Below are positions 11,748 through 62,154 of a stretch of 64,000 bases of DNA, piece by piece. The notes under the pieces are model-generated. The model worked only from the letters and a program-made list of their open reading frames with translations. It was not told the DNA's origin and made no database searches. The DNA lies in the NCBI RefSeq assembly GCF_000143415.4, contig NW_003314383.1, forward strand, positions 62,001 through 126,000, given 5' to 3'. Source of the stretch: Selaginella moellendorffii (Eukaryota > Plantae > Lycopodiophyta). The number at the start of each line of letters is the position of its first letter. The stretch's first letter is position 1. A program made the translations under genes and the position numbers.

Positions 11748-12774
11748 TCAAGCAAATATTACTTGATGAACTTGGGGTAATCCAATAGGACAGGCATTTC
11801 ATTCCTTTTGACTTTCATGCTTGTATGTCCGTTTGGAGCCAAAAATTTCTACCGAATCAATATGTTGTGAGCATTTGGAATTGAGAGGGGAAGTTCTCAA
11901 TCTTGTAAACCTTCAAAAGGCAGTGTGTGCTTCACATATAATTATCTCCTTTCTTCTTTAATCTTCTAACAATGCTGAGTTTTAAGTTCAGTGGAATGAG
12001 GTGACTGTTTCATTCATGCAGGAAACACACCCAGAAGTTCCAACGCCTAATACCCCAAAGGCATTCTTTATTTTTCTTAATGTTGGTTAATATGGTGAAA
12101 TTTTTCTGGTTACAAAGGGATTTCGAGGAGGTGGCCATTGTGTTGGTTTTTGTTTTATGTAATGGTTAACATGTTTCAGGAGAACGAATAGGCAAGCGTG
12201 ATCATAAGCGCACGCTACATTCAAATGCCAATTCTGGTATCTTTCTGTGGTACAGGCTCCAGCAAGATTTTCAAACACACCTCCATCTCCACCTCAGCAG
12301 AAACGTGCTCGTAAGTTGAAGTCAGAAAGCTGAGGAACGAAAGAGTGGTCTCCTTTTATTTGGTAAGCTGTTGGTCTCGTCTTTCTTATCTGACTGGCAT
12401 TGTTTCCTAGAAGAACTTTCGAGTAATATCTGCACGATCAAAGCGGATCTCGTTCTATGGAAAGGAGAAATCTTATAGGGCTCGGCAATTGACCCAGAAG
12501 TTGTCCAAGAAGATCTGAGATATAATATACTGGAGGCACTTTCGCGACATTCTGCGACAAATGACAAGCTCCAACGAGGAGCTATGATCGCAAAAGTCGC
12601 AGCTAAATCACAGGCTTGCGAGGGCCACGCGAAGAACGGTGTGCTTGTGTTGTCGGGGACTTGGCTACGTACTGAAATGCTCGTTGCACTGCTTCAGTCG
12701 CAATCAAGGAAAAAGATCTGGCTCTTTCATTTGTTTTCACTTTTTTGACAGGCAAAAGGCAAAAGAAGGGTGCT
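11748..12774 (+). pseudogene. Inverted duplicate of the SWC4 3' exons/introns plus downstream intergenic DNA (partner ~59574-60678)
   Basis: Reverse-complement match, e.g. acttgatgaacttggggtaatccaat, [17 protein letters not shown] and gcaaaagaagggtgct. Introns are retained, so this is a DNA-level copy. It lacks the SWC4 5' half. Confidence 0.9.
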
Positions 12775-12814
12775 CACACTTCAGGCGTCGCGCCCTTTTG
12801 GAGTTGAAAAAGTC

Positions 12815-12822
12815 TAGGGTTT
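12815..12822 (+). promoter_or_regulatory. Telo-box (TAGGGTTT) upstream of the NLR start. Others at 20239-20246 (PHY), 28966-28973 (CPN10), 31398-31405 (APC6), 36859-36866 (HAT1), 48531-48538 (VIP3)
   Basis: AAACCCTA/TAGGGTTT octamers lie within ~100 bp upstream of six predicted ATGs. This is a known plant promoter/5'UTR element. Confidence 0.55.
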
Positions 12823-12843
12823 GCGTGGGGCTGCCGAGAGGCG

Positions 12844-15800
12844 ATGCAGGGCAGGGGTTTCGGATTCGTCATGGCTGGCGGTGCCGCTTGCGCCGCCGGC
12901 CTCCATGCCATCGACGATGTGCCGTTTGAAGGCGCCATCCGCAGCTCGGCGCACCAGCTTTGCACGCTGAATGAGGTGAGTGCTTCATCCACCCTGGGCA
13001 GGGAAGGGAGATACAGCGGCCATTTCACATCTTGTGTGGCTTGGCTCAGAGCTTGCAAGGCTTAGACTCGAAGCACAGCGACGGTATGACCAAGACGCTA
13101 TCGGAAGATGTGAGGCGCAAGTGCGGCAACCTTAGCTGGGCCGACCTCGCAACCAAGCTGTCCCTGCTCATGTGGGAGCAAGCTGGGGTTGCCGACGATG
13201 GCTACAACAAGCTGCAGTGGGATGAGATACGGAACAGGGCAAATTACGTGACGGGAAGGCTGAGGGAGATGCAGGACAACTTCCCGGGCGACCACAAGGT
13301 GTTTAGGAGCACCTTTTGTGCCCTCTTGAACGCCTACGCCATCATGCATAGCATGCTCTGGAACCCGGCTTGCTCACGGTACGTGTACCCTCTCTTATCC
13401 TCCCGACCTTCCTCTCACCCATCTTTGCTCGGTTTTCAATCCAAGCAGGTGTTGTGTAGCTGCAGAATGGTGGATCTGGGGAATGGTGTATTCACAGTCA
13501 AACAGGCACAACCTGGACAGAGTCCTCGCCCGCCTTCAGCTCCATGCGCTCTACCTCAGCTCCGACATTCTGCCAGACGCAGCCAAGCTCTTTGCTGCAA
13601 CCAAAATCGTGCAGCCGGATCTGCTCGACGCGCAAAACTGCCTCATATCTAGCGTCCCGACGGCGTTGGACACTGTTGTGGGGGACAAGAGGCTCTTTCT
13701 GTCCATTTCCCCTGCTCCTGTCTCAGCCTCAGAAAGCCTACTTGCAGCTACACCAACTAGTCCCTCGTCCATGAGAGAGACTTTGATGCCCGAAGGAGCA
13801 CCGCCATTGCAACCGTTCCTGCCATCCGCCAGCATTCCTTCGGCTGTCTCCTCGCTGCCATCCACTATCGCCGCTGTTCCCTCCTCCATCGTATCCAAGG
13901 CAGTGGAAGCAGCCTCAGCTGTAGCATCTGCAGCATCGTCGGTTTTGGCGTCGGAAGTAGCACGCAGTGTTGAGGAAACCGAGCCAGAGGTGCCACAACA
14001 GGTTCAAGAAAAAGTAGAAGCTTTGAAGGTTAAGTCGTCTCTAGTTCAGTCATCCGAGCCACAGGTTGGCATGGATAACTTGGCGGGAAGGGTCTCCTTG
14101 GGTTTTCAGAAGAAGGTGGCCGATTTGCAAGACAAGGCCGCTTCTCTGCTGCAAATCAAGGCATCGGAACTGCAAAACAAGGTACTCATTATGGGAATTG
14201 GAGTGAGACTGAATAAACTTGACAGGTGCCAGCGAGGTTACTAGAATTGCAAGGGAAGGCTGGTCAGGTAGGAGCCGTGGCCTCGGACCTCCAATCCCGC
14301 GTCACCGCAATTCCGTCGGTGTTGGATGCGAAAACAAGCGAGATGCAGGCCCGTGTCGGGTCGACTCTGTCCTCCCTTCCCTCGCAAGTCCGGGAAAGTA
14401 TTTCAGACGCACAGGCAAAGTCCTCTGCAGAAATGCAGGCGACTGCTTCGTCAGTACAGTCTGGGCTGCGAAATAAAGTTGCTACTCTCTCATCGGCGAT
14501 ACAGGCGAAGGTTGCAGCAGAAGACGTTCAAGCTAAGGTGGCATCGGGGTTCAGGTCATCTGACCTGGTTTCAGACTTACGTGAGCCTTCGACAGAAGTA
14601 AAGTCAAGTGTACAATCAAGAATTCAAGCTCTCGAGTCACGAGCCTCTGCTTCTGCTCCAAAGCACCACCTTCCTCCAAAACCTCCATCCGTTGCAGTGG
14701 ATGTTCCACCGGCCGTGGCAACCGTGGCATCTGCTGTTGCGTCGGCGGCATCCGCAGCGATGGCGGCAGCTAGCTCCGCAATTCAGGCACAGGAAGCAGC
14801 ACCAGCTCCGCAAGTAGTTCCTGTAGCCATTGTCAGTGCACCGGGAAAGATGGCCAAGCCTTCAATACGCATGCCGTCTCCTTCGGGGCCCATAACTACA
14901 GAGACGACAATGGGAGGCCAGAAGGTGTTTGTGACACTCCCTGAGACTCCCAAGTTGCTGCCAGCTCCGGTGGAACAGCAAGCAGCAAGGGGCGGTAGTA
15001 TGGTGAGCTTGGCCGCGGCGTCCACGTTAGCAGCGCTCCCGCCCTTGGAGCAAGGGATATTTGATCTTCCGGCGGTGCCACTGGCAGTGTTCCCTACGGC
15101 TGAGAAGAGCCACTGCCTAGCCATAGTTCCGTTTCAAGAGCAGAGGCACTGCGTGGCCTTGATACCGGCGTTGGGAGCGGCATCTGGCGACAGGCCATTG
15201 ATTGCAATTGTGCCACACGAAGACATGAAGCACTGCTTGGCGGTGCTGCCAGGCGCCCGTAGTGTTGGTCTTCCCGAGCACAAGAAGCGGTGCCTGGCTA
15301 TCATTCCGTACCAGGACAAGGACAGCTGCCTGGCGTTGATCCCCACGTCACAGGAGGTGGCCTCGGCTGGCGAGCAACAAGAGAGCTCCCTGGCTGTGGT
15401 GCCGTTTGAGGACAGGCTCGAGTGCCTGGCGGTGGTCCCGACTGCGCCATCGGAGGCGCTTGCCAGCATGAGCGCGAGCAAGAGCGCGCAGGACCTGGTG
15501 CAGTGCTTGGCCATGCTTCCGCCTCAAGAACACGAGCACGGCGGCGTGGTGCGCAAGTTGGCAGTGGTTCCATTGGACGACAAGATGAACTGTCTGGCAC
15601 TACTGAGGCCCGACGGCCCTCTGGACCTGCGGCAGCAGTGCATGGCTCTCATTCCCGCCATGCCGGAAGCCGTCCACGCGAGGCTAGAGCAGCACAGGCA
15701 TTCCTGCTTGGCCATATTCCCGGCGTCCACGCCGGGTGGTGGCCAAGGCCAGGCGCTGGCACTCATTCCCGTGGCAGGAGCAGGAGCAGAGGAGGCTCCT

Positions 15801-18800
15801 TGCCTGGCGATAGAGCCAACCACCCCGGAGGCGGCCATGGCGGACCAAAGGCACTGCATTGCCATCATCCCCACCAACCCGGACGTGTGCATGGCAGACG
15901 GTGGCTTCTCGATTGTCCCCACGACACCGAACGCAGCCCTCCGCGACGCCAGCCAGTGCTTCGCTATCATCCCCACCGCTCCCAACCTCGCCTTGTGCCA
16001 CCAGAAGACCGTGCTCGCCATTGTACCTGCTGCACCGTCCGCCACCCCAGCAGGCCCCAGCACCAGCGCAGGCACCCTCGAGGCTGACAAGCCTCTTGTC
16101 ACTGTCCTCCCCTCCCCTTCTTCATCGTCCTTCCCGTTCGCGGACAAGCACAAGTTCCTTCTCCCGCCCGACGAGCCTACGACCGCCCAACTTTACGAGG
16201 AGCTCCAGCCGGTTGCGCACCTTATCAAAGTGGGGCTGAGGGAGCGAGTGCGAGCTCTTGTGGATGAGCTTGAAAAGCATGATAAGCAGCGGCAGGTGGC
16301 GGGAGTGGCTATCCTAGGCGAGGGCGGGCTTGGAAAGAGTGCAATACTGAGAGAAGTCCTTACGGAACTCCGGAGGAAAGGCGAACACGCAGTGGCGTAT
16401 GGAGAGACGAGCGTGGCATCTTCACCGGAGGCCCTCACGGACACCATCTCTAGCCTTGTCCACCAGCTTGGAGGGGATTCGAGGGAAGTATATTACAGCA
16501 CGCTGGAAGCCAGGCAAGCTCTCGGCAAGCAGCTGGCGCAGCTTGGGGCCAAGCAAAAGGCGGTGTGCGTGGCGGTGGACAATGTTTGGTCTGGTGCAGC
16601 TCTGAGGGAAATGCTGCCCAGGAACCTGAGCCAGTTGCTATCTCCGGCAAGCTGTGTTATGGTTACTTGTCCCTCCGAGTCCGTGGCACGGGCGCTGGAC
16701 GAGCTGTGCAAACCAGCACATCCGAGTGCTACCGTCAACTACTGTTTTTGGTGCTATCAACCCAGCCATCTGTCACCTCCAGAGGCCAAAGAAATGTTTA
16801 TGCTGCACGCGTCCAAGCGCGGGGTGCATCTCTTACCGGAGCATGAAGAGCTGGTTGACGATCTTGTCCCGCTCTGTGGCGGCCTTCCGCTCGTGCTGCA
16901 GGTTGTGGGCTCACACTTTGCAAGGTTTGCCCGACGGAAGAGAGACGAGTGGCTGCACATAGCAAAGAAGCTGAAGCTGGCACAGGAGTTCCAAGTTCGC
17001 GACGACGAGATATGCTCCAAGCTCAAGGTGATTTACGACGGTCTCGACCCGTCCTTTCAGGAGGCCTTCCTGGACGTTGCAACGTTCTTCCGCGGCGCCA
17101 ACTGGAAGATGGTGGAGAGGAGTCTGGGCAAGCACCAGCTCGCAAGCTTGGCAGATCAAGCTTTCGTGTTTGCCAAGCAAAAAGAGCCGGATGCACAATG
17201 GTGCTCGCAGGATCTACTGGATTCGGTGCCTGTGTGCAGGCAATCCATGAGGTTGAATACAGAAGTCGTGGAGATGCATGATTTGGTTTACTCTCTGGGC
17301 CACCAGCTTGCCAAGGGAAGCTACGTGACTTCCAGCGACGCACAGAGGTTGCCGGATGTCCTGCACAATAAAGGGGTAAGTGATCTCCCTCCCTCTCCTT
17401 TGCTTTGCTGATCATTCTTGTTTGCAGGAGCTAAGCATGATCAAGGGGCTTACATTGAAGAGGTGTCAAGAGCCTTTCCCTGTGGGACTCATCGACAAGA
17501 TGAGGAAGCTTCATGTACTCGTCTTCGAAGGCACGAGTATGATCGGTCACTGCCACCGCCCCCCGCACCAGCTGCGCTACTTGGTTTGGCATCCCCTGGA
17601 CCAAGGGAAGGAGAGAGCATCAATGCCGTTCAAGCTCAAGAGACTCAGCAAGCTTGCCGTGGCACATTTGCACAACATACGGTCTGATTTCACCGACATT
17701 GACGTAAGCTGAGGCAACAAGGCTAGCCAGCTCTCTAAAAACTTCTTGTTTGGCTTGTCCCTTGTGCAGTTCCCTCCGAAACTGGTGGAGTTGGAGCTAG
17801 ACAACTGCGTGAAGCTTGTTGAACTCCCCCGCTCAATCGGGAGCTTGAAATGGCTGCACAGCCTGCACATGCACAACTGCCACAGCCTGAGAGCACTTCC
17901 GGACTCGATTGGGGGCCTGGTCATGCTGCAGGAGCTTGTGCTCAGCGTGTGTACCAGCATCACGGAGCTGCCGCAGTCCTTGGGGAACCTCCACGACCTC
18001 GAGTACGTGGACCTTGCGGCTTGTTTCAAGCTCATGGCCCTGCCCAGAAGCATTGGAAGGTTGATGGCGCTCAAGGTGATGGACTTGACAGGATGCGAGA
18101 GCCTGACGAGCTTGCCGCCGGAGATCGGTGAGCTGCGGAACCTGAGAGAGCTGGTCCTCGCGGGGTGTGGGTCGCTCAAGGAGCTCCCCCCTGAGATTGG
18201 GTCGCTCACACACTTGACCAACCTGGACGTGTCCCATTGTGAGCAGCTGATGCTTTTACCGCAGCAGATTGGAAACCTGACTGGCTTGAGAGAGCTCAAC
18301 ATGATGTGGTGCGAGAAGCTGGCGGCCCTTCCCCCTCAGGTTGGCTTCCTGCACGAGCTGACGGACCTGGAGCTGTCCGACTGCAAGAACCTGCCAGAGC
18401 TTCCCGTGACCATTGGGAAGCTGAGCTGTTTGAAACGGCTGCACCTGCGCGGATGTGCTCACCTCAAAGTGCTGCCACCCGAGATAGGTGGCCTCAAAAG
18501 CGTGAGCTCGATTGACTTTCGGGGGTGCGTGAGCCTGGCATCACTTCCGTCTGCGGAGATTGCAAAGATGAAACCGCTCACGTTCCTGGGTGCCGAGTGT
18601 GGGCCTGCCACCGAGTTGTGGCCAAACGTCCACCACCTCAGTGCGCTCAAGCGGCTTGACATTGACGACAAGTCTGGCTGCTGCGTCCTTGTTCCAGCGG
18701 AGATTTGGTCGCTTAGCACGTTGGAGAGGCTTGCGCTGCGGGGTTTCCGGGGAGTAGGCGGTTTTGCCCACGCAAAGTGGAACCTGCCCCTGCTCACGTC

Positions 18801-19941
18801 CCTGTGGATGGAAGGCTTCACCAACGTCACCGCTCTGCCATCAGAGCTGGCAACTCTAACATCGTTGACCTTCCTGGTGCTGGCTGAGTTCTCGAGCCTC
18901 ACCGAGCTGCCGCCGGGCATTGGCCACCTGAGCAAGCTGGAGAGGCTGAGCCTGAGATGTAGAAAGCTCAAGACACTGGCGCCAGACATGTTCAGGGGGC
19001 TAACAAAGCTGCGTTGCTTAAGCTTGGCCGAGTGCGTGAGCTTGACGACGCTGGCCGTACCCAGAGGGAGCCTGGCGTCCCTAGAGATTCTCGACTTGGT
19101 AGGGTGCAGCAGCCTGACGGAGCTCCCGGCGGCCGTTGCCGGCATGAGCTCGCTGGAGAGGCTCAACTGCAGGGAGTGCACCGCACTCAAGGCCCTTCCC
19201 CCTCAAGTTGGCGAGCCAACAAGGCTGCAGGCACTCTACCTCCAGCAGTGCTCAACGCTCAAGGAGCTTCCGCCACAGATTGGGAAGCTGTCCATGCTGG
19301 AGAGGCTCGACTTGAAAAAGTGTGGCGGCCTAACGAGCTTGCCCTCGGAGATTGGCATGCTGTCAAGGCTCAAGTTCTTACATCTCAATGCGTGCACGGG
19401 TATCAAGCAACTCCCGGCAGAGGTTGGAGACATGCGGAGCCTGGTGGAGCTGGGGTTGGAAGGATGTACGAGCCTCAAGGGGTTGCCAGCGCAGGTTGGT
19501 CAGCTGCGCAGCCTGGAAAACCTTGGTCTCGACGGCTGTACGGGCTTAACATCGCTGCCAGCGGATGTGGGGAATCTGGAATCCCTCAAGCGTTTGTCAC
19601 TGGCCAAGTGTTCGGCCCTCGAGGGGCTTCCGCGGGAGGTGGGCAGGCTGCCAAAGCTCAAGCTTTTGCGGCTGGACGGGTGCACCAGCATGAGTGAAGT
19701 GCCTGCGGAGCTTGGACACGTGCAGACGCTCGTCAACTTGGGTTTGGAGGGGTGCACCTCGCTGAGCTCCATACCGCCGGGGATTTTCAGGCTGCCAAAT
19801 CTGGAGCTCTTGGACCTGAGGAGGTGCACACTGCTGGCTCAAGACGTGGGCTCCTCGTCGGACATGCACAAGTATGGCTGCACCCTGGTGACCAACGACT
19901 TGGACTGGGAAGGGTTTGAGGAGGTTTGGCTTTACTACTGA
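12844..19941 (+). CDS. NB-ARC-LRR (NLR) protein, ~2263 aa, with a very long atypical N-terminus. Exons 12844-12975, 13050-13378, 13449-14181, 14226-17375, 17428-17703, 17770-19941
   Basis: P-loop GEGGLGKS, Walker B VAVDNVW, CGGLPL, RNBS-D FLDVATFF and MHD (EMHDLV), then nearly 30 24-aa LRRs (LxxLPxxIGxLxxLxxLxLxxC). All six exons join in frame through GT-AG introns. The first two exons are less certain. Confidence 0.88.
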
Positions 19942-20334
19942 GTGGGGGCGGCGGATTTTGTTGAGCGAGCGAGCGCAGAGCTTTGATTCGATTCCCCTTG
20001 GCAATGGCAGAGGGTGTGGATGGATAATAATACAAGTGCAGTCAGATTTGTTCACATGGACCTCACATGACCGATGATATAACAAAACATATATCCTATA
20101 TAACACACAGGAAAAGTAAAGAAGAAAAGGTAAAGTAGATAAGTAGCCACTGAGGAGGAGCAAGGGTTGTTCTTCTCTCAACTGGCAAGAATGGACAAAT
20201 CCTCGTGCCTCCCGGAGCGGGCAGCCCAGCTAGGTAGATAGGGTTTGGGTCTCGCAGGGCCTCACGCGCCTCAAAACGGGGTTAGATGTTGTAGGCAAGA
20301 GGGGCGAGCAAGGGGAAGATCTAGAGAGGCGAGC

Positions 20335-23300
20335 ATGTCGACCACCAAGCTGACTTACTCTTCGGGCAGCTCCGCCAAGTCCAAGCACAGCGTCCGTGTG
20401 GCACAGACGACCGCGGATGCCAAGCTCCATGCCGTGTACGAGGAGTCTGGTGAGTCCGGGGACTCGTTCGACTACACCAAGTCGGTGAATGCAACCAAGT
20501 CCACGGGCGAGAGCATCCCGGCGCAGGCCGTCACGGCCTACTTGCAGCGGATGCAGCGCGGTGGCCTGGTGCAGCCCTTCGGCTGTATGCTGGCGGTGGA
20601 GGAGGGCAGCTTCCGCGTGATTGCTTTCAGCGACAATGCAGGGGAGATGCTGGACCTCATGCCCCAGTCGGTCCCCAGCCTCGGCGCCGGGCAGCAGGAT
20701 CTGCTGGGGATCGGCAGCGACGCGCGCAGCCTCTTCACGCCGGCCAGCGCCAGCGCCCTGGAGAAGGCGGCGGGCGCCATCGACGTGAGCATGCTCAACC
20801 CCATCTCCGTCCACTGCAAGACGTCGGCCAAGCCCTTCTACGCCATCGTCCATCGCATCGACGTGGGCCTGGTGCTGGACCTGGAGCCCGTCAAGGCCAG
20901 CGACACGAGCGTGGGATCCGCTGCCGGTGCCCTCCAGTCCCACAAGCTGGCGGCCAAGGCCATATCGCGCCTCCAGTCGCTGCCCGGCGGCGACATCGGG
21001 CTGCTGTGCGACACGGTGGTGGAGGAGGTGCGCGAGCTGACGGGCTACGACCGCGTCATGGCCTACAAGTTCCACGACGACGAGCACGGCGAGGTGGTGG
21101 CGGAGATCCGGCGCTCCGACCTGGAGCCTTACCTGGGCCTGCACTACCCGGCAACCGACATTCCCCAGGCCTCCCGCTTCCTCTTCATGAAGAACCGGGT
21201 ACGCATGATCTGCGACTGCTCCGCGGCGCCCGTCAAGATCAGCCAGGACAAGGATCTGCGGCAGCCCATCAGCTTGGCCGGCTCCACGCTGCGGGCACCC
21301 CACGGTTGCCACGCGCAGTACATGGGCAACATGGGCTCCGTCGCCTCGCTGGTGATGGCGGTGATCATCAACGACAACGACGACGAGTACCGCTCGTCGT
21401 CGGGCGGGGGTGGCGGCGGCGGCGCGTACCAGCAGAAGGGCAGGAAGCTGTGGGGGATGGTGGTGTGCCACCACACGTCGCCTCGCTCGGTGCCTTTCCC
21501 ACTGCGCTCCGCCTGCGAGTTCCTCATGCAAGTGTTTGGGCTCCAGCTCAACATGGAGGTGGAGCTGGCAGCGCAGCTGCGGGAGAAGCACATCCTGCGC
21601 ACCCAGACACTCCTGTGTGACATGCTGCTCCGCGACGCCCCCATCGGCATTGTGTCGCAGTCACCAAACATCATGGACCTGGTCAAGTGCAATGGTGCTG
21701 CCCTCTACTACGGCAAGCGCTTCTGGCTCTTGGGCGTCACGCCCAGCGAGGCGCAAATCAAGGACATTGCCGACTGGCTGCTGGAGCACCACAAGGACTC
21801 CACCGGCCTCAGCACCGACAGCCTGGCCGACGCCGGCTACCCGGGTGCCGCGTCACTGGGCGACGAGGTGTGCGGCATGGCCGCGGCCAAGATCACCGCC
21901 AAGGACTTTTTGTTTTGGTTCCGCTCCCACACCGCCAAGGAGATCAAGTGGGGTGGCGCCAAGCACGACCCCGACGACAAGGACGACGGGCGCAAGATGC
22001 ACCCCCGCTCCTCGTTCAAGGCCTTCCTCGAGGTGGTGAAGCGGAGGAGCCTGCCATGGGAGGACGTGGAGATGGACGCCATACACTCGCTGCAGCTCAT
22101 CCTCCGCGGCTCCTTCCACGACATTGACGACAGCGACACCAAGACCATGATCCACGCGCGCCTCAACGACCTCAAGCTCCAGGGCATGGACGAGCTGAGC
22201 ACTGTCGCCAACGAGATGGTACGCCTCATCGAGACCGCCACCGCGCCCATCCTTGCTGTCGACTCGAGCGGCTTTATCAACGGCTGGAACGCAAAGGTGG
22301 CGGAGCTCACCGGGCTGCCCGTGACCGAGGCCATGGGGAGGTCCCTCGCCAAGGACCTGGTGCTGCAAGAGTCTGCGGACATGGTGGAGAGGCTGCTCTA
22401 TCTGGCGCTTCAAGGTACGCCATGACACACTTTCACGTACCTCACGCTAGCTAACCAGTTTCGTGTGGTGTGAAACAACAAACCAGGCGACGAGGAGCAG
22501 AATGTGGAGCTCAAGCTCAAGACGTTCGGCGTTCAAAAGGACAAGGAGGCGGTCATTCTGGTCGTCAACGCGTGCGCCAGCAGGGACGTTTCGGACAATG
22601 TGGTGGGAGTGTGCTTCGTTGGCCAGGACGTGACGGGGCAGAAGGTGGTAATGGACAAGTTCACGCGCATCCAAGGCGACTACAAGGCCATCGTGCAGAA
22701 CCCCAACCCGCTGATACCGCCAATCTTTGGCGCTGACGAGTTTGGCTACTGCTCCGAGTGGAATCCTGCCATGGAAAAGCTGTCTGGGTGGAAGCGGGAA
22801 GAAGTCCTGGGAAAGATGCTTGTCGGAGAGATATTTGGCATCCAGATGATGTACTGCCGCCTCAAAGGCCAGGACGCCGTCACCAAATTTATGATCGTTC
22901 TCAACAGTGCAGCAGATGGCCAGGACACGGAGAAGTTCCCCTTCGCCTTCTTTGATCGACAGGGCAAGTACGTCGAGGCTCTCCTCACGGCCACCAAGCG
23001 GGCGGATGCCGAGGGTTCCATCACTGGAGTGTTTTGCTTCCTACATATTGCTAGTGCCGAGTTGCAACAGGCCTTGACAGTCCAAAGAGCCACCGAGAAG
23101 GTTGCCTTGTCCAAGCTCAAAGAACTGGCTTACATCCGCCAGGAGATAAAGAATCCGCTCTATGGCATCATGTTCACTCGGACTCTCATGGAAACCACCG
23201 ACCTGTCCGAGGATCAGAAGCAGTACGTAGAGACTGGTGCTGTGTGCGAGAAGCAAATAAGGAAGATCCTGGACGATATGGACCTGGAAAGCATTGAGGA

Positions 23301-59461: not shown

Positions 59462-60045
59462 CTGTCTCTCTCTCTCTTTCACGCAGTGTTAGAATGGCTT
59501 CTCGAGTTAGATGAGTTTATTTCCTTGGGAAAGCTAAAGGCGAGCAATAGTACAGTAGGCTTTTGACAATGGTAGCACCCTTCTTTTGCCTTTCGCCAAA
59601 GTGAAAAATAAAAATAAAAATGAAAGAGCCAAATCTTTTTCCTTGACTGCGACTGAGGCAGTGCAACGAGCATTTCAGTACGTAGCCAAGTGCCCGACGA
59701 CACAAGCACACAGTTGCTCGCGTGGCCCTCGCAAGCCCGTGTTAGCTGGGACTTTTGCGATCATAGCTTCTCGTTAGAGCTTGTGATTTGTCGCGGAATC
59801 CGTGTCAAAGTGCCTCCGGTATATTATATCTCAGATTTTCTTGGACAAGGAAAGCTACGTTTGTGTGACTGGTCAATCGCCGAGCGGGAGGCTCGTCCCT
59901 ATGAGATTTCTCTTCTTTCTATAGAACAAGATCCGCTTTGATCGCGGAGATATTACTCGAAAGTTCTTCTAGGAAACAATGCCAGTCAGATAAGAAAGAC
60001 GAGACCGACAGCTTACCAAATAAAAGGAGACCACTCTTTCGTTCC

Positions 60046-62154
60046 TCAGCTTTCTGACTTCAACTTGCGAGCACGTTTCTGCTGAGGTGGAGATGGAGGC
60101 GTGTCTGAAAATCTTGCTGGAGCCTGTACCACAGAAAGATACCAGAATTGGCATTCGAATGTAGCGTACGCAACATTTACCTTGCGCTTGTGATCGCGCT
60201 TGCCTATTCGTTCTCCTGAAACATGTTAACCATTACATAAATCAAAAACCAACACAATGGCCACTCACCTGATACAGCAGCAGCACGGTCACCTCCTCGA
60301 AATCCCCTCTGTAACCAGGAAAAATTCACCATATTAACCAACATTAAGAAAAATAAAGAACACCTTCGGGGTATTAGGCGTTGAAACTTCTGGGTGTGTT
60401 TCCCGCATGAATGAAACAGTCGCCTCGTTCCATTGAACCTACAACTCAGCGTCGTTAGAAGATTAAAGAAAAAAGGAGACAATTATATATGAAGCACGCA
60501 CCGCCTTTTGAAGGTTTACTAGATTGAGAACTTCCCTTCTCAATTCCAAATGCTCACGACATATCGATTCGGTAGGAATTTTCGGCTCCAAACGAACCTA
60601 CAAGCATGAAAGTCAAAAGGAATGAAATGCCTGTCCCATTGGATTACCCCAAGTTCATCAAGTAGTATTTGCTCGATACGCTTCACTATCCGTGCTCCAA
60701 CTGACGAAAGCATACTTTGTACCATTTGCCCCAAATTAGGACCTCGAAGAAACACGCGATGCTGCTAGCGAAGTCAAGGTGAGTAGACAAAAAAAGCACA
60801 ATTTAGACAAAAATTACGGACCCCACGAGTAGTAGTAGTGGTAGACGTCGCTGCTGCTGCAGTATCAGTAGAAGGCTGCGTAAGATCTGTTCCAGGGGCA
60901 GAAGGTTGTTCTGCCTGCTCGTCCACCTGTTATGGTTATAGTTCCGGTGTTTAATGCTGAAAGAAAAATGAAATGTAAAAATACGTACTTTACTCAGACG
61001 GGCTTCGGTAATACGCTTAGCCTCCGCGAGTACCTATGCAAGAACACCAGTTAAAAGGAGTAAGAAATGAAGAACACGCATACTTCCGCGTCCTCCCGCT
61101 CCTGTTGCCTCGACTGAGACAATAGCAAGCCAAGGGCGCGCTTGCGTTCCGTTTCATAATTGAAGTTGTATGCGTCCTGAAAGGGCATCCCGAATTCAGC
61201 GTTAGCTCAAGATTTCATGCAGATTTATACCTTCACATGCGGATGGTCAGCCACCTCTTCAGGAGTTGTGGCCCTGGATAATATTATTGCTTTGGACGCT
61301 TCATATCAAAGGAGAAGTGTTAGGAAGTACTGAGAAACACATACGGAGACAAGGGCAACCTGAGTAGTAGCGATCCTTGAGTTCCTCAACAGTACGTGGA
61401 GGAGAGAACCTGTCCGCTATTATAACGAATCGAAGGTCGAATTGCTCGCACATGCTGAACAGAAGGTCTGTTTCTTGTTTCGTCCATTTCTACAAAATAG
61501 AAAAAGAAAAAGAAGAAAAATGTTAAGCACACAAAATGGTCTTAGCACATACCGTATCTGCTAGGTGCTTGTTGTACTCGTCATCTGTATACTTCAAGAC
61601 TGCCACAGACTGTTTGAAGTTTGATTCTCTTAGACGAAACACAAGAAGGCCAAAGAAATTAAAGGCACTCACTCTATTGTACTTCGCGAAAGCGTAATCC
61701 CCGGTCGGCACCACCGAGTCCACGACTCGCACCTAGAAAATAAAAATAAAAAACATGTTTCGAATGCTAAAGTCTTGAATGTACGTGGTCACAGACCCAA
61801 TGTGATAGCTGCAACCCATCCGTGCGTGCCGAATTCGCAAAAGGAAGCCATTGCCACGAAATCTATCGAAAAACAAAATTTTCCAGATGCTATTTTGCAA
61901 GGAAGCTTACCTTTTGAGACGAAGCTTGACGTTGCTTGGTATCCACAGAGGCTATCAGAGGCGGCAGACCTCCAGTGAGAGCATATACCTACATGAATGC
62001 CCGTAATTCAATCCGGAGCTAGAATAGAGCTACTCTTTCTTACCTCCCGGGAGACACGATCGAGCTTCTTGGGCACCGTCTCCTTGGGCGCCCGGACGCG
62101 CTTGTCGCCCACAGGCCCTCCCTTGGGCAGCCCAAGGATGTCCTTGGCGTCCAT
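60046..62154 (-). CDS. SWC4: SWR1/NuA4 complex subunit SWC4 (DMAP1), multi-exon
   Basis: [50 protein letters not shown]-like [12 protein letters not shown]...[10 protein letters not shown] and the C-terminus [10 protein letters not shown]. Confidence 0.93.

What the first reader, a model, noticed from the sequence alone, without database searches (positions are those of the whole stretch)
15081..16028. NLR with an unrecognised array of ~20 C-L-A-[ILV]-[ILV]-P motifs just before the NB-ARC
Seen: about 20 short hydrophobic hexapeptides (CLAIVP, CVALIP, CLAVLP, CLAIIP, CLALIP, CLAVVP, CLAMLP, CMALIP, CLAIFP, CIAIIP, CFAIIP and variants). Several come in pairs with exact 12-aa spacing and a charged turn: CLAIVPFQEQRHCVALIP, IAIVPHEDMKHCLAVLP, CLAIIPYQDKDSCLALIP, LAVVPFEDRLECLAVVP, LAVVPLDDKMNCLALL. 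The linkers are variable and the DNA has diverged, so the motif appears to be conserved at protein level. Known: plant NLRs carry TIR, CC or RPW8 at this position (kinase or hydrolase in bryophytes), and fungal and bacterial NLRs use short beta-forming amyloid motifs here. Inference: this could be a new NLR module, either a beta-hairpin/solenoid or amyloid-like signalling element, a Cys-based redox/metal/acylation array, or a multivalent linear-motif decoy for pathogen effectors.
Basis: partly seen in the sequence, partly recalled or inferred. Interest (0 to 1): 0.88.

Follow-up and report, generated by a model that had tools for sequence, protein, structure and literature searches.

The report
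Orphan hydrophobic motif array in Selaginella NLR
One of the few NLR immune-receptor genes of the spikemoss Selaginella moellendorffii carries, just before its nucleotide-binding domain, a transcribed run of 20 short hydrophobic "C-L-A-I-V-P"-type peptides that selection keeps only at protein level and that resembles nothing described, so its function is still a guess.

Summary
Window 15078-16028 (+) encodes 20 copies of [C]-Φ-A-Φ-Φ-P: 18 strict and 2 degenerate. No shuffle out of 20,000 reached 18 strict copies (the maximum was 3). Ala and Pro are each kept in 19 of 20 copies, while their third codon positions are random (identity 0.33 against 0.315 expected). The motif is therefore held at amino-acid level, not at DNA level.

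The gene is Selaginella moellendorffii LOC112342872 (2260 aa, "uncharacterized"). The array is aa 681-996 and lies in the same 3.15-kb exon as a bona fide NB-ARC. Spliced RNA contigs and stranded reads cover the array and run into the NB-ARC with no joint inside it.

The array is not the N-terminal module. About 680 residues precede it: a helical region, then apolipoprotein-like repeats. It sits in an ~830-residue Pro/Ala-rich low-complexity tract.

Pfam, PDB, the ESM Atlas, two word-based searches and an exhaustive phmmer search of 1.84 billion representatives found no relative. AlphaFold2 gives no fold (pLDDT 33).

Best reading (about 0.45): a multivalent "sticker-spacer" array of β-strand-forming docking motifs in a disordered linker. 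The fungal and bacterial amyloid-motif analogy fails its defining tests.

The scan also noted the same array on another piece of this genome (s1-421041), probably the second haplotype. No orthologue could be examined.

The parts
15078..16028 (+). Array of 20 [C]-Φ-A-Φ-Φ-P hexapeptides (P0001 aa 680-996).
   Evidence: There are 18 strict and 2 degenerate copies, and 0 of 20,000 shuffles reached 18.
15078..15608 (+). N-terminal half of the array (motifs 1-12). It holds six 12-residue spacings, which form double units of the type ΦAΦΦP-[FHYLT]-[EQDA]-[EDQ]-x-x-x-C-ΦAΦΦP.
15639..16028 (+). C-terminal half of the array (motifs 13-20). These are single motifs spaced 16-22 residues apart; five of the eight are followed by T-x-P (PTAP, PTTP, PTNP).
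14226..17375 (+). Exon 4, a single open exon. It carries the end of the apolipoprotein-like repeats, a Pro/Ala-rich tract, the array, and the NB-ARC through to the MHD motif.
   Evidence: 1061-aa ORF; mapping of P0001 onto the window; a spliced joint at its 5' end and no joint inside it.
16245..17039 (+). NB-ARC domain (Pfam PF00931 match).
   Evidence: E 9.8e-12, 45.1 bits against a cut-off of 23.5.
16317..16340 (+). P-loop, GEGGLGKS.
17274..17282 (+). MHD motif.
17428..17703 (+). Exon 5, the start of the LRR region.
   Evidence: The introns on either side have GT..AG ends. No reads tested them.
17770..19941 (+). Exon 6, the LRR domain up to the stop codon.
   Evidence: (LRR_14, E 2e-70).
13086..13378 (+). 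N-terminal coding exon, from the first in-frame ATG. It is part of the predicted helical region.
13379..13448 (+). Intron of 70 nt with GT..AG ends, supported by RNA.
   Evidence: table 5: reads from X15 and X16 and a contig from X5.
13449..14181 (+). Exon 3: the end of the helical region, a Pro/Ser/Ala-rich tract, and the start of the amphipathic repeats.
14182..14225 (+). Intron of 44 nt with GT..AG ends, supported by RNA.
   Evidence: table 5: X15, X16, X1 and X5.
14271..14651 (+). Apolipoprotein A1/A4/E-like amphipathic repeats. The match is below the Pfam cut-off.
   Evidence: E 1.6e-5, 25 bits against a cut-off of 90.

Best explanation
SHOWN. The array is a genuine, expressed part of one S. 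moellendorffii NLR (LOC112342872). It consists of 20 very hydrophobic hexapeptides, [C]-Φ-A-Φ-Φ-P, separated by polar linkers of 6-21 residues with low hydropathy. It lies inside an ~830-residue Pro/Ala-rich tract that is poor in aromatic residues, between a helical N-terminal region and the NB-ARC. The motif is maintained by purifying selection on the peptide.

INFERRED. It works as a multivalent "sticker-and-spacer" module.
- Each hexapeptide is a short strand-forming docking element ended by a proline. In the first half these are arranged as strand-turn-strand pairs.
- Many weak copies together give avidity. The avidity would serve either binding of an oligomeric or repeated partner, or motif-motif self-association once the NB-ARC oligomerises.
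- In either case the array would help to hold the receptor in check or to concentrate and assemble it on activation.
- The partner is unknown.
For: - The motif is real and far beyond chance.
- Ala and Pro are each kept in 19 of 20 copies while using all four codons. Identity at the third codon position is 0.33, against 0.315 expected from composition.
- The only allelic change inside a motif core is the conservative L908I. The other amino-acid changes and a 4-residue insertion fall in linkers.
- Mean scaled hydropathy is 0.39 for the linkers, below the charge-hydropathy boundary of 0.435, and 0.75 for the motifs. The region has 10% Pro, 15.5% Ala and only 2% aromatic residues. The flanking tracts 231-680 and 997-1065 have similar composition.
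- Linker lengths vary from 6 to 21 residues.
- AlphaFold2 gives no fold (mean pLDDT 32.6) but draws most of the motifs as short strands.
- The array is transcribed on the + strand and is continuous with the NB-ARC, with no joint inside it.
- No domain family, solved structure or homologue matches it.
Against: - No partner has been identified, and no orthologue could be examined.
- The AlphaFold2 run used a single sequence, which often fails on real folds.
- Both faces of the putative strand are constrained (L and I on one face, the invariant small Ala and V on the other). This fits burial in a core or a tight zipper better than simple one-sided docking.
- The spacings cluster at 12, 16 and 18 residues, which could reflect a structural register.
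- RNA depth is low, about 0.1-1.5x per bin in the array.
Confidence: 0.45

Rival explanations
1. The array is a folded beta-rich repeat domain, for example an irregular beta-sandwich, hairpin stack or solenoid. The hexapeptides would be its core strands.
For: - The motifs have strand-favouring residues, and both faces are conserved.
- Six spacings are exactly 12 residues, each with a polar turn of similar pattern. The spacings in the second half are regular at 16-18 residues.
- AlphaFold2 draws the motifs as strands.
Against: - pLDDT is 32.6 throughout, with pTM 0.20.
- Overall spacing ranges from 12 to 34 residues.
- There is 10% Pro and only 2% aromatic residues.
- One allele tolerates a 4-residue insertion.
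- There is no match in PDB or Pfam, even with a profile of the repeat unit.
Confidence: 0.2
2. The array is a Cys-centred lipidation module. The Cys that precedes most motifs would be S-acylated, helped by the adjacent hydrophobic residues and the nearby basic or His residues. Together with the amphipathic repeats upstream, this would tether the receptor to a membrane.
For: - 13 of the 20 motifs start with Cys.
- All 15 Cys residues of the ~830-residue low-complexity tract lie in the array.
- Basic or His residues are frequent at positions -4 to -2.
- Apolipoprotein-like amphipathic repeats lie upstream.
Against: - Cys is the least conserved motif position (13 of 20, against 19 of 20 for Ala and Pro).
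- Seven copies keep ΦAΦΦP without Cys.
- Acylation does not explain the invariant Ala and Pro.
Confidence: 0.1
3. The array is an amyloid-like (prion-like) signalling element, of the kind fungal and bacterial NLRs use to template a separate executioner protein.
For: The segments are short, hydrophobic and beta-prone, and they lie N-terminal to a STAND ATPase.
Against: - The known systems have one motif of about 21 residues at the very N-terminus, and the same motif on the product of the adjacent gene (PMC5485727).
- Here there are 20 hexapeptides starting at residue 681.
- Every copy but one ends in proline.
- No other reading frame in the 64-kb window carries the motif in a credible gene. The downstream neighbour is a phytochrome.
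- No Pfam amyloid-motif family matches at E <= 1.
Confidence: 0.07
4. The array is a functionally neutral low-complexity expansion with no role of its own.
For: - It has no homologue anywhere.
- It lies in a long low-complexity tract.
- Alleles differ by an indel.
Against: A neutral repeat old enough to have random third codon positions would not keep Ala and Pro in 19 of 20 copies.
Confidence: 0.05

Closest known systems
Plant NB-ARC-LRR immune receptors with non-canonical N-termini (bryophyte kinase-NLRs and hydrolase-NLRs, and the 'NL/undefined' class of NLRtracker surveys; PMC11218826, PMC12512272)
   Same: It has an NB-ARC with P-loop, GLPL and MHD motifs and a C-terminal LRR of the CxxLxxLP type. 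The nearest NB-ARCs are TIR-NLR-type, at 24-26% identity.
   Different: The N-terminal ~1060 residues have no TIR, CC, RPW8, kinase or hydrolase domain. They contain an orphan motif array that the papers searched do not describe.
Fungal and bacterial NLR amyloid signalling motifs (HET-s/HRAM, sigma, PP, BASS)
   Same: Both are short beta-prone hydrophobic motifs placed N-terminal to a STAND NTPase.
   Different: This array is not at the N-terminus. It has 20 hexapeptide copies rather than one unit of about 21 residues. Almost every copy ends in proline. No partner gene carries the motif, and there is no profile match.
Multivalent linear-motif arrays in disordered regions (for example the tandem SUMO-interacting motifs of RNF4, or FG repeats of nucleoporins; from my own knowledge)
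   Same: Many copies of a short hydrophobic motif are separated by polar, variable spacers, and only the motif is conserved.
   Different: The ΦAΦΦP consensus fits no motif class I could recall. By eye, only about 4 of 20 copies fit a SIM-type pattern, and this was not checked against ELM. No reader domain is known.
Tenebrio-type 12-residue Cys-containing beta-helix repeats and other short-period solenoids (from my own knowledge)
   Same: Some neighbouring Cys-containing motifs have a 12-residue period.
   Different: Only single pairs (once a triplet) have that spacing before a longer linker intervenes. There is no regular array, no confident model and no sequence match.

Membership tests
Plant NLR (NB-ARC-LRR) | NB-ARC domain above the Pfam gathering score | tested here: met
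   PF00931 scores 45.1 bits against a cut-off of 23.5, E 9.8e-12.
Plant NLR (NB-ARC-LRR) | P-loop, GLPL and MHD motifs | tested here: met
   GEGGLGKS at aa 1093, GGLPL at aa 1280 and MHD at aa 1412 of P0001.
Plant NLR (NB-ARC-LRR) | C-terminal leucine-rich repeats | tested here: met
   LRR_14 E 2e-70, plus RPS2-, RPS4B- and R13L1-type LRR families.
Plant NLR (NB-ARC-LRR) | Canonical N-terminal TIR, CC (Rx_N) or RPW8 domain | tested here: not met
   no Pfam family at E <= 1 in aa 1-400; the region is helical but pLDDT is only 40; no Atlas look-alike.
NLR amyloid signalling motifs (fungal/bacterial) | Motif at the very N-terminus of the NLR, in place of an effector domain | tested here: not met
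   The array spans aa 681-996 of 2260. The definition is taken from PMC5485727.
NLR amyloid signalling motifs (fungal/bacterial) | The same motif on an executioner protein encoded by the adjacent gene | tested here: not met
   the 10 other pattern hits in the window are scattered singletons, none in a credible gene (nine have a stop codon within 40 codons; one is antisense to this gene). The next gene is a phytochrome.
NLR amyloid signalling motifs (fungal/bacterial) | Match to a known motif family profile | tested here: not met
   the only Pfam row for aa 670-1060 at E <= 1 is GF_recep_IV at E 0.51.
NLR amyloid signalling motifs (fungal/bacterial) | Forms a self-templating cross-beta fold | not testable with these tools
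   This needs ThT binding, SDD-AGE or solid-state NMR.
Beta-solenoid / regular repeat domain | Constant repeat period and a confident repetitive fold | tested here: not met
   Spacing ranges from 12 to 34 residues. AlphaFold2 pLDDT is 32.6, but this was a single-sequence run, so the fold part of the test is inconclusive.
NLR integrated domain (decoy) | Homology to a domain of a separate host protein | tested here: inconclusive
   Searches found no other protein with the array. A host protein carrying only one or two hexapeptides would be invisible to these searches.
S-acylated cysteine-rich anchor | Cysteines are the conserved and essential residues | tested here: inconclusive
   Cys is present in 13 of 20 copies, less conserved than Ala and Pro (19 of 20 each). 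The modification itself cannot be tested here.
Known short linear motif classes (SIM, MAPK D-site, clathrin box, LIR, PTAP) | Consistent match of the copies to the class pattern | not tested
   Patterns were compared by eye from memory only, and no class fitted most copies. There are two exact PTAP motifs, and the allele change A980P destroys one of them.

The most novel reading that the evidence does not exclude
The array is a new kind of NLR module, in one of two forms. It could be an integrated multivalent linear-motif bait that mimics a docking motif of a host hub protein targeted by pathogen effectors. Alternatively it could be a proximity-triggered beta-strand zipper, which condenses or templates assembly when the NB-ARC oligomerises. 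The second form would be a plant counterpart of amyloid or condensate-based NLR signalling.
Probability: 0.15. Interest if true: 0.85.

Novelty: new variant of a known kind. Interest (0 to 1): 0.5.

Why it matters
S. moellendorffii is reported to have an unusually small NLR repertoire, about 2 in one survey (PMC3782705). Each receptor therefore matters for understanding lycophyte immunity.

This receptor has about 1060 residues before its NB-ARC that no domain library recognises. Within them is a selectively maintained 20-copy motif with no relative among 1.84 billion protein representatives.

If the motif proves to be a docking, self-assembly or bait element, it would add a new way of coupling an NLR to its partners. 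It would also give a compact peptide handle (ΦAΦΦP) with which to fish for them.

If it proves to be only a lineage-specific spacer, it is a curiosity. The present evidence cannot decide between these.

Tried and rejected
- **Homology searches of the array.** All were blank apart from the protein itself: the ESM Atlas, a word-indexed search with the whole-ORF length window and with the array-only length window, exhaustive phmmer against 1.84 G representatives, Pfam at E <= 1, PDB by sequence and PDB with a profile of the 20 units (only NikD at E 0.8, which is chance).
- **P0002.** This weak phmmer hit is a 188-aa protein with TLAVIPRQDNVRH repeated eight times. It looked similar but is a lone ORF over a perfect minisatellite in a gene-poor metagenome contig, so I rejected it as chance. 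P0003 is low-complexity noise.
- **AlphaFold2.** Models of the array and of aa 50-330 both had pLDDT of 40 or less. I therefore ran no fold search, because matches to such models are meaningless.
- **DNA- or RNA-level function of the repeat.** Rejected, because third codon positions are random.
- **Coding on the antisense strand.** Long antisense ORFs exist in this GC-rich stretch. I rejected them because all laid read pairs over the array have the same orientation (first mate on the - strand), the usual sign of + strand RNA in a stranded library, and the + frame runs straight into the NB-ARC.
- **C2H2-like zinc site from HC...HC pairs.** Only one pair has both His-Cys dyads, so I rejected this.
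- **N-termini of the nearest NB-ARC relatives.** The Calypogeia, Riccia and Ceratodon proteins have hydrolase- or kinase-type N-termini and no such array.
- **Literature.** No paper contains the locus name, the accession or the motif.
- **Hsp70-site and prolyl-isomerase-substrate readings.** I considered both, but neither explains the invariant Ala and Pro, and neither can be tested here.


Full report
**What is there**

- A strict pattern [LIVMF]-A-[ILVM]-[ILVFE]-P occurs 18 times, and there are two degenerate copies (CLALLR, GFSIVP).
- 20,000 shuffles of the same residues never gave more than 3 hits.
- Over the 20 copies the columns are Cys 13, Leu 14, Ala 19, I/V/L 19, V/I/L/F 19 and Pro 19.
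- Six spacings are exactly 12 residues, each with a polar six-residue turn of similar pattern. These form strand-turn-strand-like double units in the first half.
- The second half has single motifs 16-22 residues apart, five of the eight followed by T-x-P.
- The six-frame translation of the whole 64-kb window has only 10 other hits. They are scattered and none lies in a credible gene: nine have a stop codon within 40 codons, and one is antisense to this gene. The rest of the protein has none.

**The motif is selected as a peptide**

TRF finds no tandem DNA repeat across the array itself, only two short repeats within linkers. The best direct-repeat families are 61-76% identical.

Ala is encoded by GCC, GCA, GCG and GCT in 6, 5, 4 and 4 copies. 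Pro is encoded by CCG, CCC, CCA and CCT in 7, 6, 4 and 2 copies. Pairwise identity among the motif codons is 0.55, 0.88 and 0.33 at positions 1, 2 and 3. Position 3 would be 0.315 from base composition alone.

Synonymous sites are therefore randomised while the residues are held. This excludes both a recent DNA repeat and a function at nucleic-acid level.

**The gene**

The array lies in a 1061-codon ORF (14226-17411) that continues in frame into an NB-ARC domain (Pfam 45.1 bits against a cut-off of 23.5). A 731-codon LRR ORF follows.

An exhaustive phmmer search returned a 2260-aa protein 100% identical over the array, P0001. A later search and an exact look-up name it [quoted passage not shown], XP_024521209.1.

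Mapping P0001 onto the window gives six exons. The array (aa 681-996) and the NB-ARC (P-loop at 1093, GLPL at 1280, MHD at 1412) share exon 4, 14226-17375.

**Expression**

I laid two stranded RNA-seq runs and two contig sets on 12800-18799.
- Only two joints appeared, both with GT..AG ends: a 70-nt intron and a 44-nt intron upstream of the array. Contigs of X1 and X5 carry these joints, so those runs are RNA.
- Reads or contigs cover every 200-base bin of the array. One X1 contig (15733-16341) runs from the last six motifs into the P-loop.
- No joint lies inside the array.
- Depth is low, so rare isoforms cannot be excluded.
- All reads over the array have the first mate on the - strand, the usual sign of + strand RNA.

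**Alleles**

Among the runs, the array carries 3 synonymous and 5 non-synonymous differences. Only one non-synonymous change hits a motif core, and it is conservative (L908I, which turns LALIP into LAIIP). One allele has a 4-residue insertion in a linker. Another change (A980P) destroys one of the two exact PTAP motifs. The pattern fits "motif constrained, linker free", but the numbers are small.

**Position in the protein**

The array does not replace the usual N-terminal domain. Ahead of it lie:
- a region that AlphaFold2 draws as eight helices (aa ~52-230, pLDDT only about 40-50);
- a Pro/Ser/Ala-rich tract;
- amphipathic repeats with a sub-threshold apolipoprotein match (E 1.6e-5);
- another Pro/Ala-rich tract.

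From aa 231 to 1065 the chain has 6-16% Pro and 13-22% Ala, and aromatic residues are only 1-2% up to aa 996 (5.8% in the short 997-1065 tract). All 15 Cys residues of this stretch are in the array. Array linkers have mean scaled hydropathy 0.39, below the charge-hydropathy boundary of 0.435, while the motif residues score 0.75. No Pfam family matches aa 1-400 at E <= 1.

**Relatives**

None was found.
- The ESM Atlas gave no usable hit.
- Word-indexed searches were blank, both with the full-ORF length window and with the array alone.
- phmmer against 1.84 billion representatives found only the protein itself and two weak hits at E about 4e-4. One is a perfect 13-residue minisatellite ORF in a gene-poor metagenome contig. 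The other is low-complexity noise.
- PDB by sequence and by unit profile, and Pfam, gave nothing.
- The nearest NB-ARCs are TIR-NLR-type at 24-26% identity, so the receptor itself is an outlier. Liverwort and moss relatives have hydrolase or kinase N-termini without any such array.
- How well these databases cover other Selaginella species is unknown, so the absence of orthologues is weak evidence.
- A note of this scan (s1-421041) reports the same "~20x CLAIVP" array on another piece of this genome. I could not read it. The published assembly holds both haplotypes (my own knowledge), so it is most likely the allele.

**Structure**

AlphaFold2 without an alignment gives mean pLDDT 32.6 and pTM 0.20 for aa 670-1005. 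Most motifs are drawn as short strands, but nothing is confident. This fits disorder but does not prove it. I ran no fold search on such models.

**Mechanism**

The facts are: very hydrophobic, strand-prone, proline-capped hexapeptides; polar linkers of variable length that tolerate indels; a disordered-looking context; and selection on the motif only. They fit best a multivalent sticker-spacer module, in which the copies dock as strands onto a partner or onto each other and gain strength by avidity (about 0.45).

Two features keep a folded beta domain alive as a rival (about 0.2). Both faces of the strand are constrained, including an invariant small Ala, and the spacings cluster at 12, 16 and 18 residues.

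A lipidation array (about 0.1) is weakened because Cys is the least conserved position.

The amyloid-signalling analogy (about 0.07) fails the defining features given in PMC5485727. The motif is not at the N-terminus, there are 20 hexapeptides rather than one unit of about 21 residues, no neighbouring gene carries the motif, and all copies but one end in proline.

A neutral expansion (about 0.05) is contradicted by the codon evidence.

**Comparison with what is known, and novelty**

The gene passes the tests for a plant NB-ARC-LRR receptor but lacks every described N-terminal class. Surveys of non-flowering-plant NLRs list TIR, CC, RPW8, Cbl-N, hydrolase, kinase and "undefined" types (PMC11218826, PMC12512272). 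No searchable paper contains the locus, the accession or the motif.

I therefore class it as a new variant of a known kind: a known receptor type carrying an orphan, selectively maintained motif array.

Interest is moderate at 0.5. It is unusual and testable, but it has been seen in only one species, its function is unknown, and lineage-specific low-complexity inserts are common.

Noticed in passing
window 20245-22425 (+) and onward: The gene immediately downstream of the NLR is a phytochrome. Its N-terminal photosensory region is one long ORF beginning [19 protein letters not shown]...
   Followed up: no
window 14182-14225 and 13379-13448: Two very short RNA-supported introns, 44 nt and 70 nt, both with GT..AG ends. 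The two annotated downstream introns are 52 nt and 66 nt.
   Followed up: partly
window 11751-12774 (+) versus 59574-60673 (-): A ~1.1-kb dispersed repeat in inverted orientation, 86% identical. One copy ends about 70 bp upstream of the annotated start of the NLR. It is probably a transposable-element fragment.
   Followed up: partly
window 12844-13086: The annotated first exon and intron (start at 12844, intron 12919-13001) are not supported by an RNA contig that runs unspliced from 12887 to 13070. A contig from the second sample has a 15-nt loose end before 13048. The true start may be the in-frame ATG at 13086 or an alternative 5' exon.
   Followed up: partly
window 14271-14651 (+), P0001 aa 411-537: Amphipathic repeats with a sub-threshold match to apolipoprotein A1/A4/E (E 1.6e-5) on the same NLR. 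The scan also noted these as s1-408548.
   Followed up: partly
L001:10001-10567: A metagenome contig carries a perfect eightfold 13-residue repeat, TLAVIPRQDNVRH. It superficially resembles the paired units here. It lies in a gene-poor stretch of short ORFs and looks like a minisatellite, not a relative.
   Followed up: yes
window 15134-16153 (-) and 15422-16087 (+, other frame): Long alternative-frame and antisense ORFs (126-221 aa) overlap the array because of its high GC content. The antisense frame shows a mirrored G-x-x-A-[KR]-[HQ] repeat. The read orientation does not support antisense transcription.
   Followed up: partly
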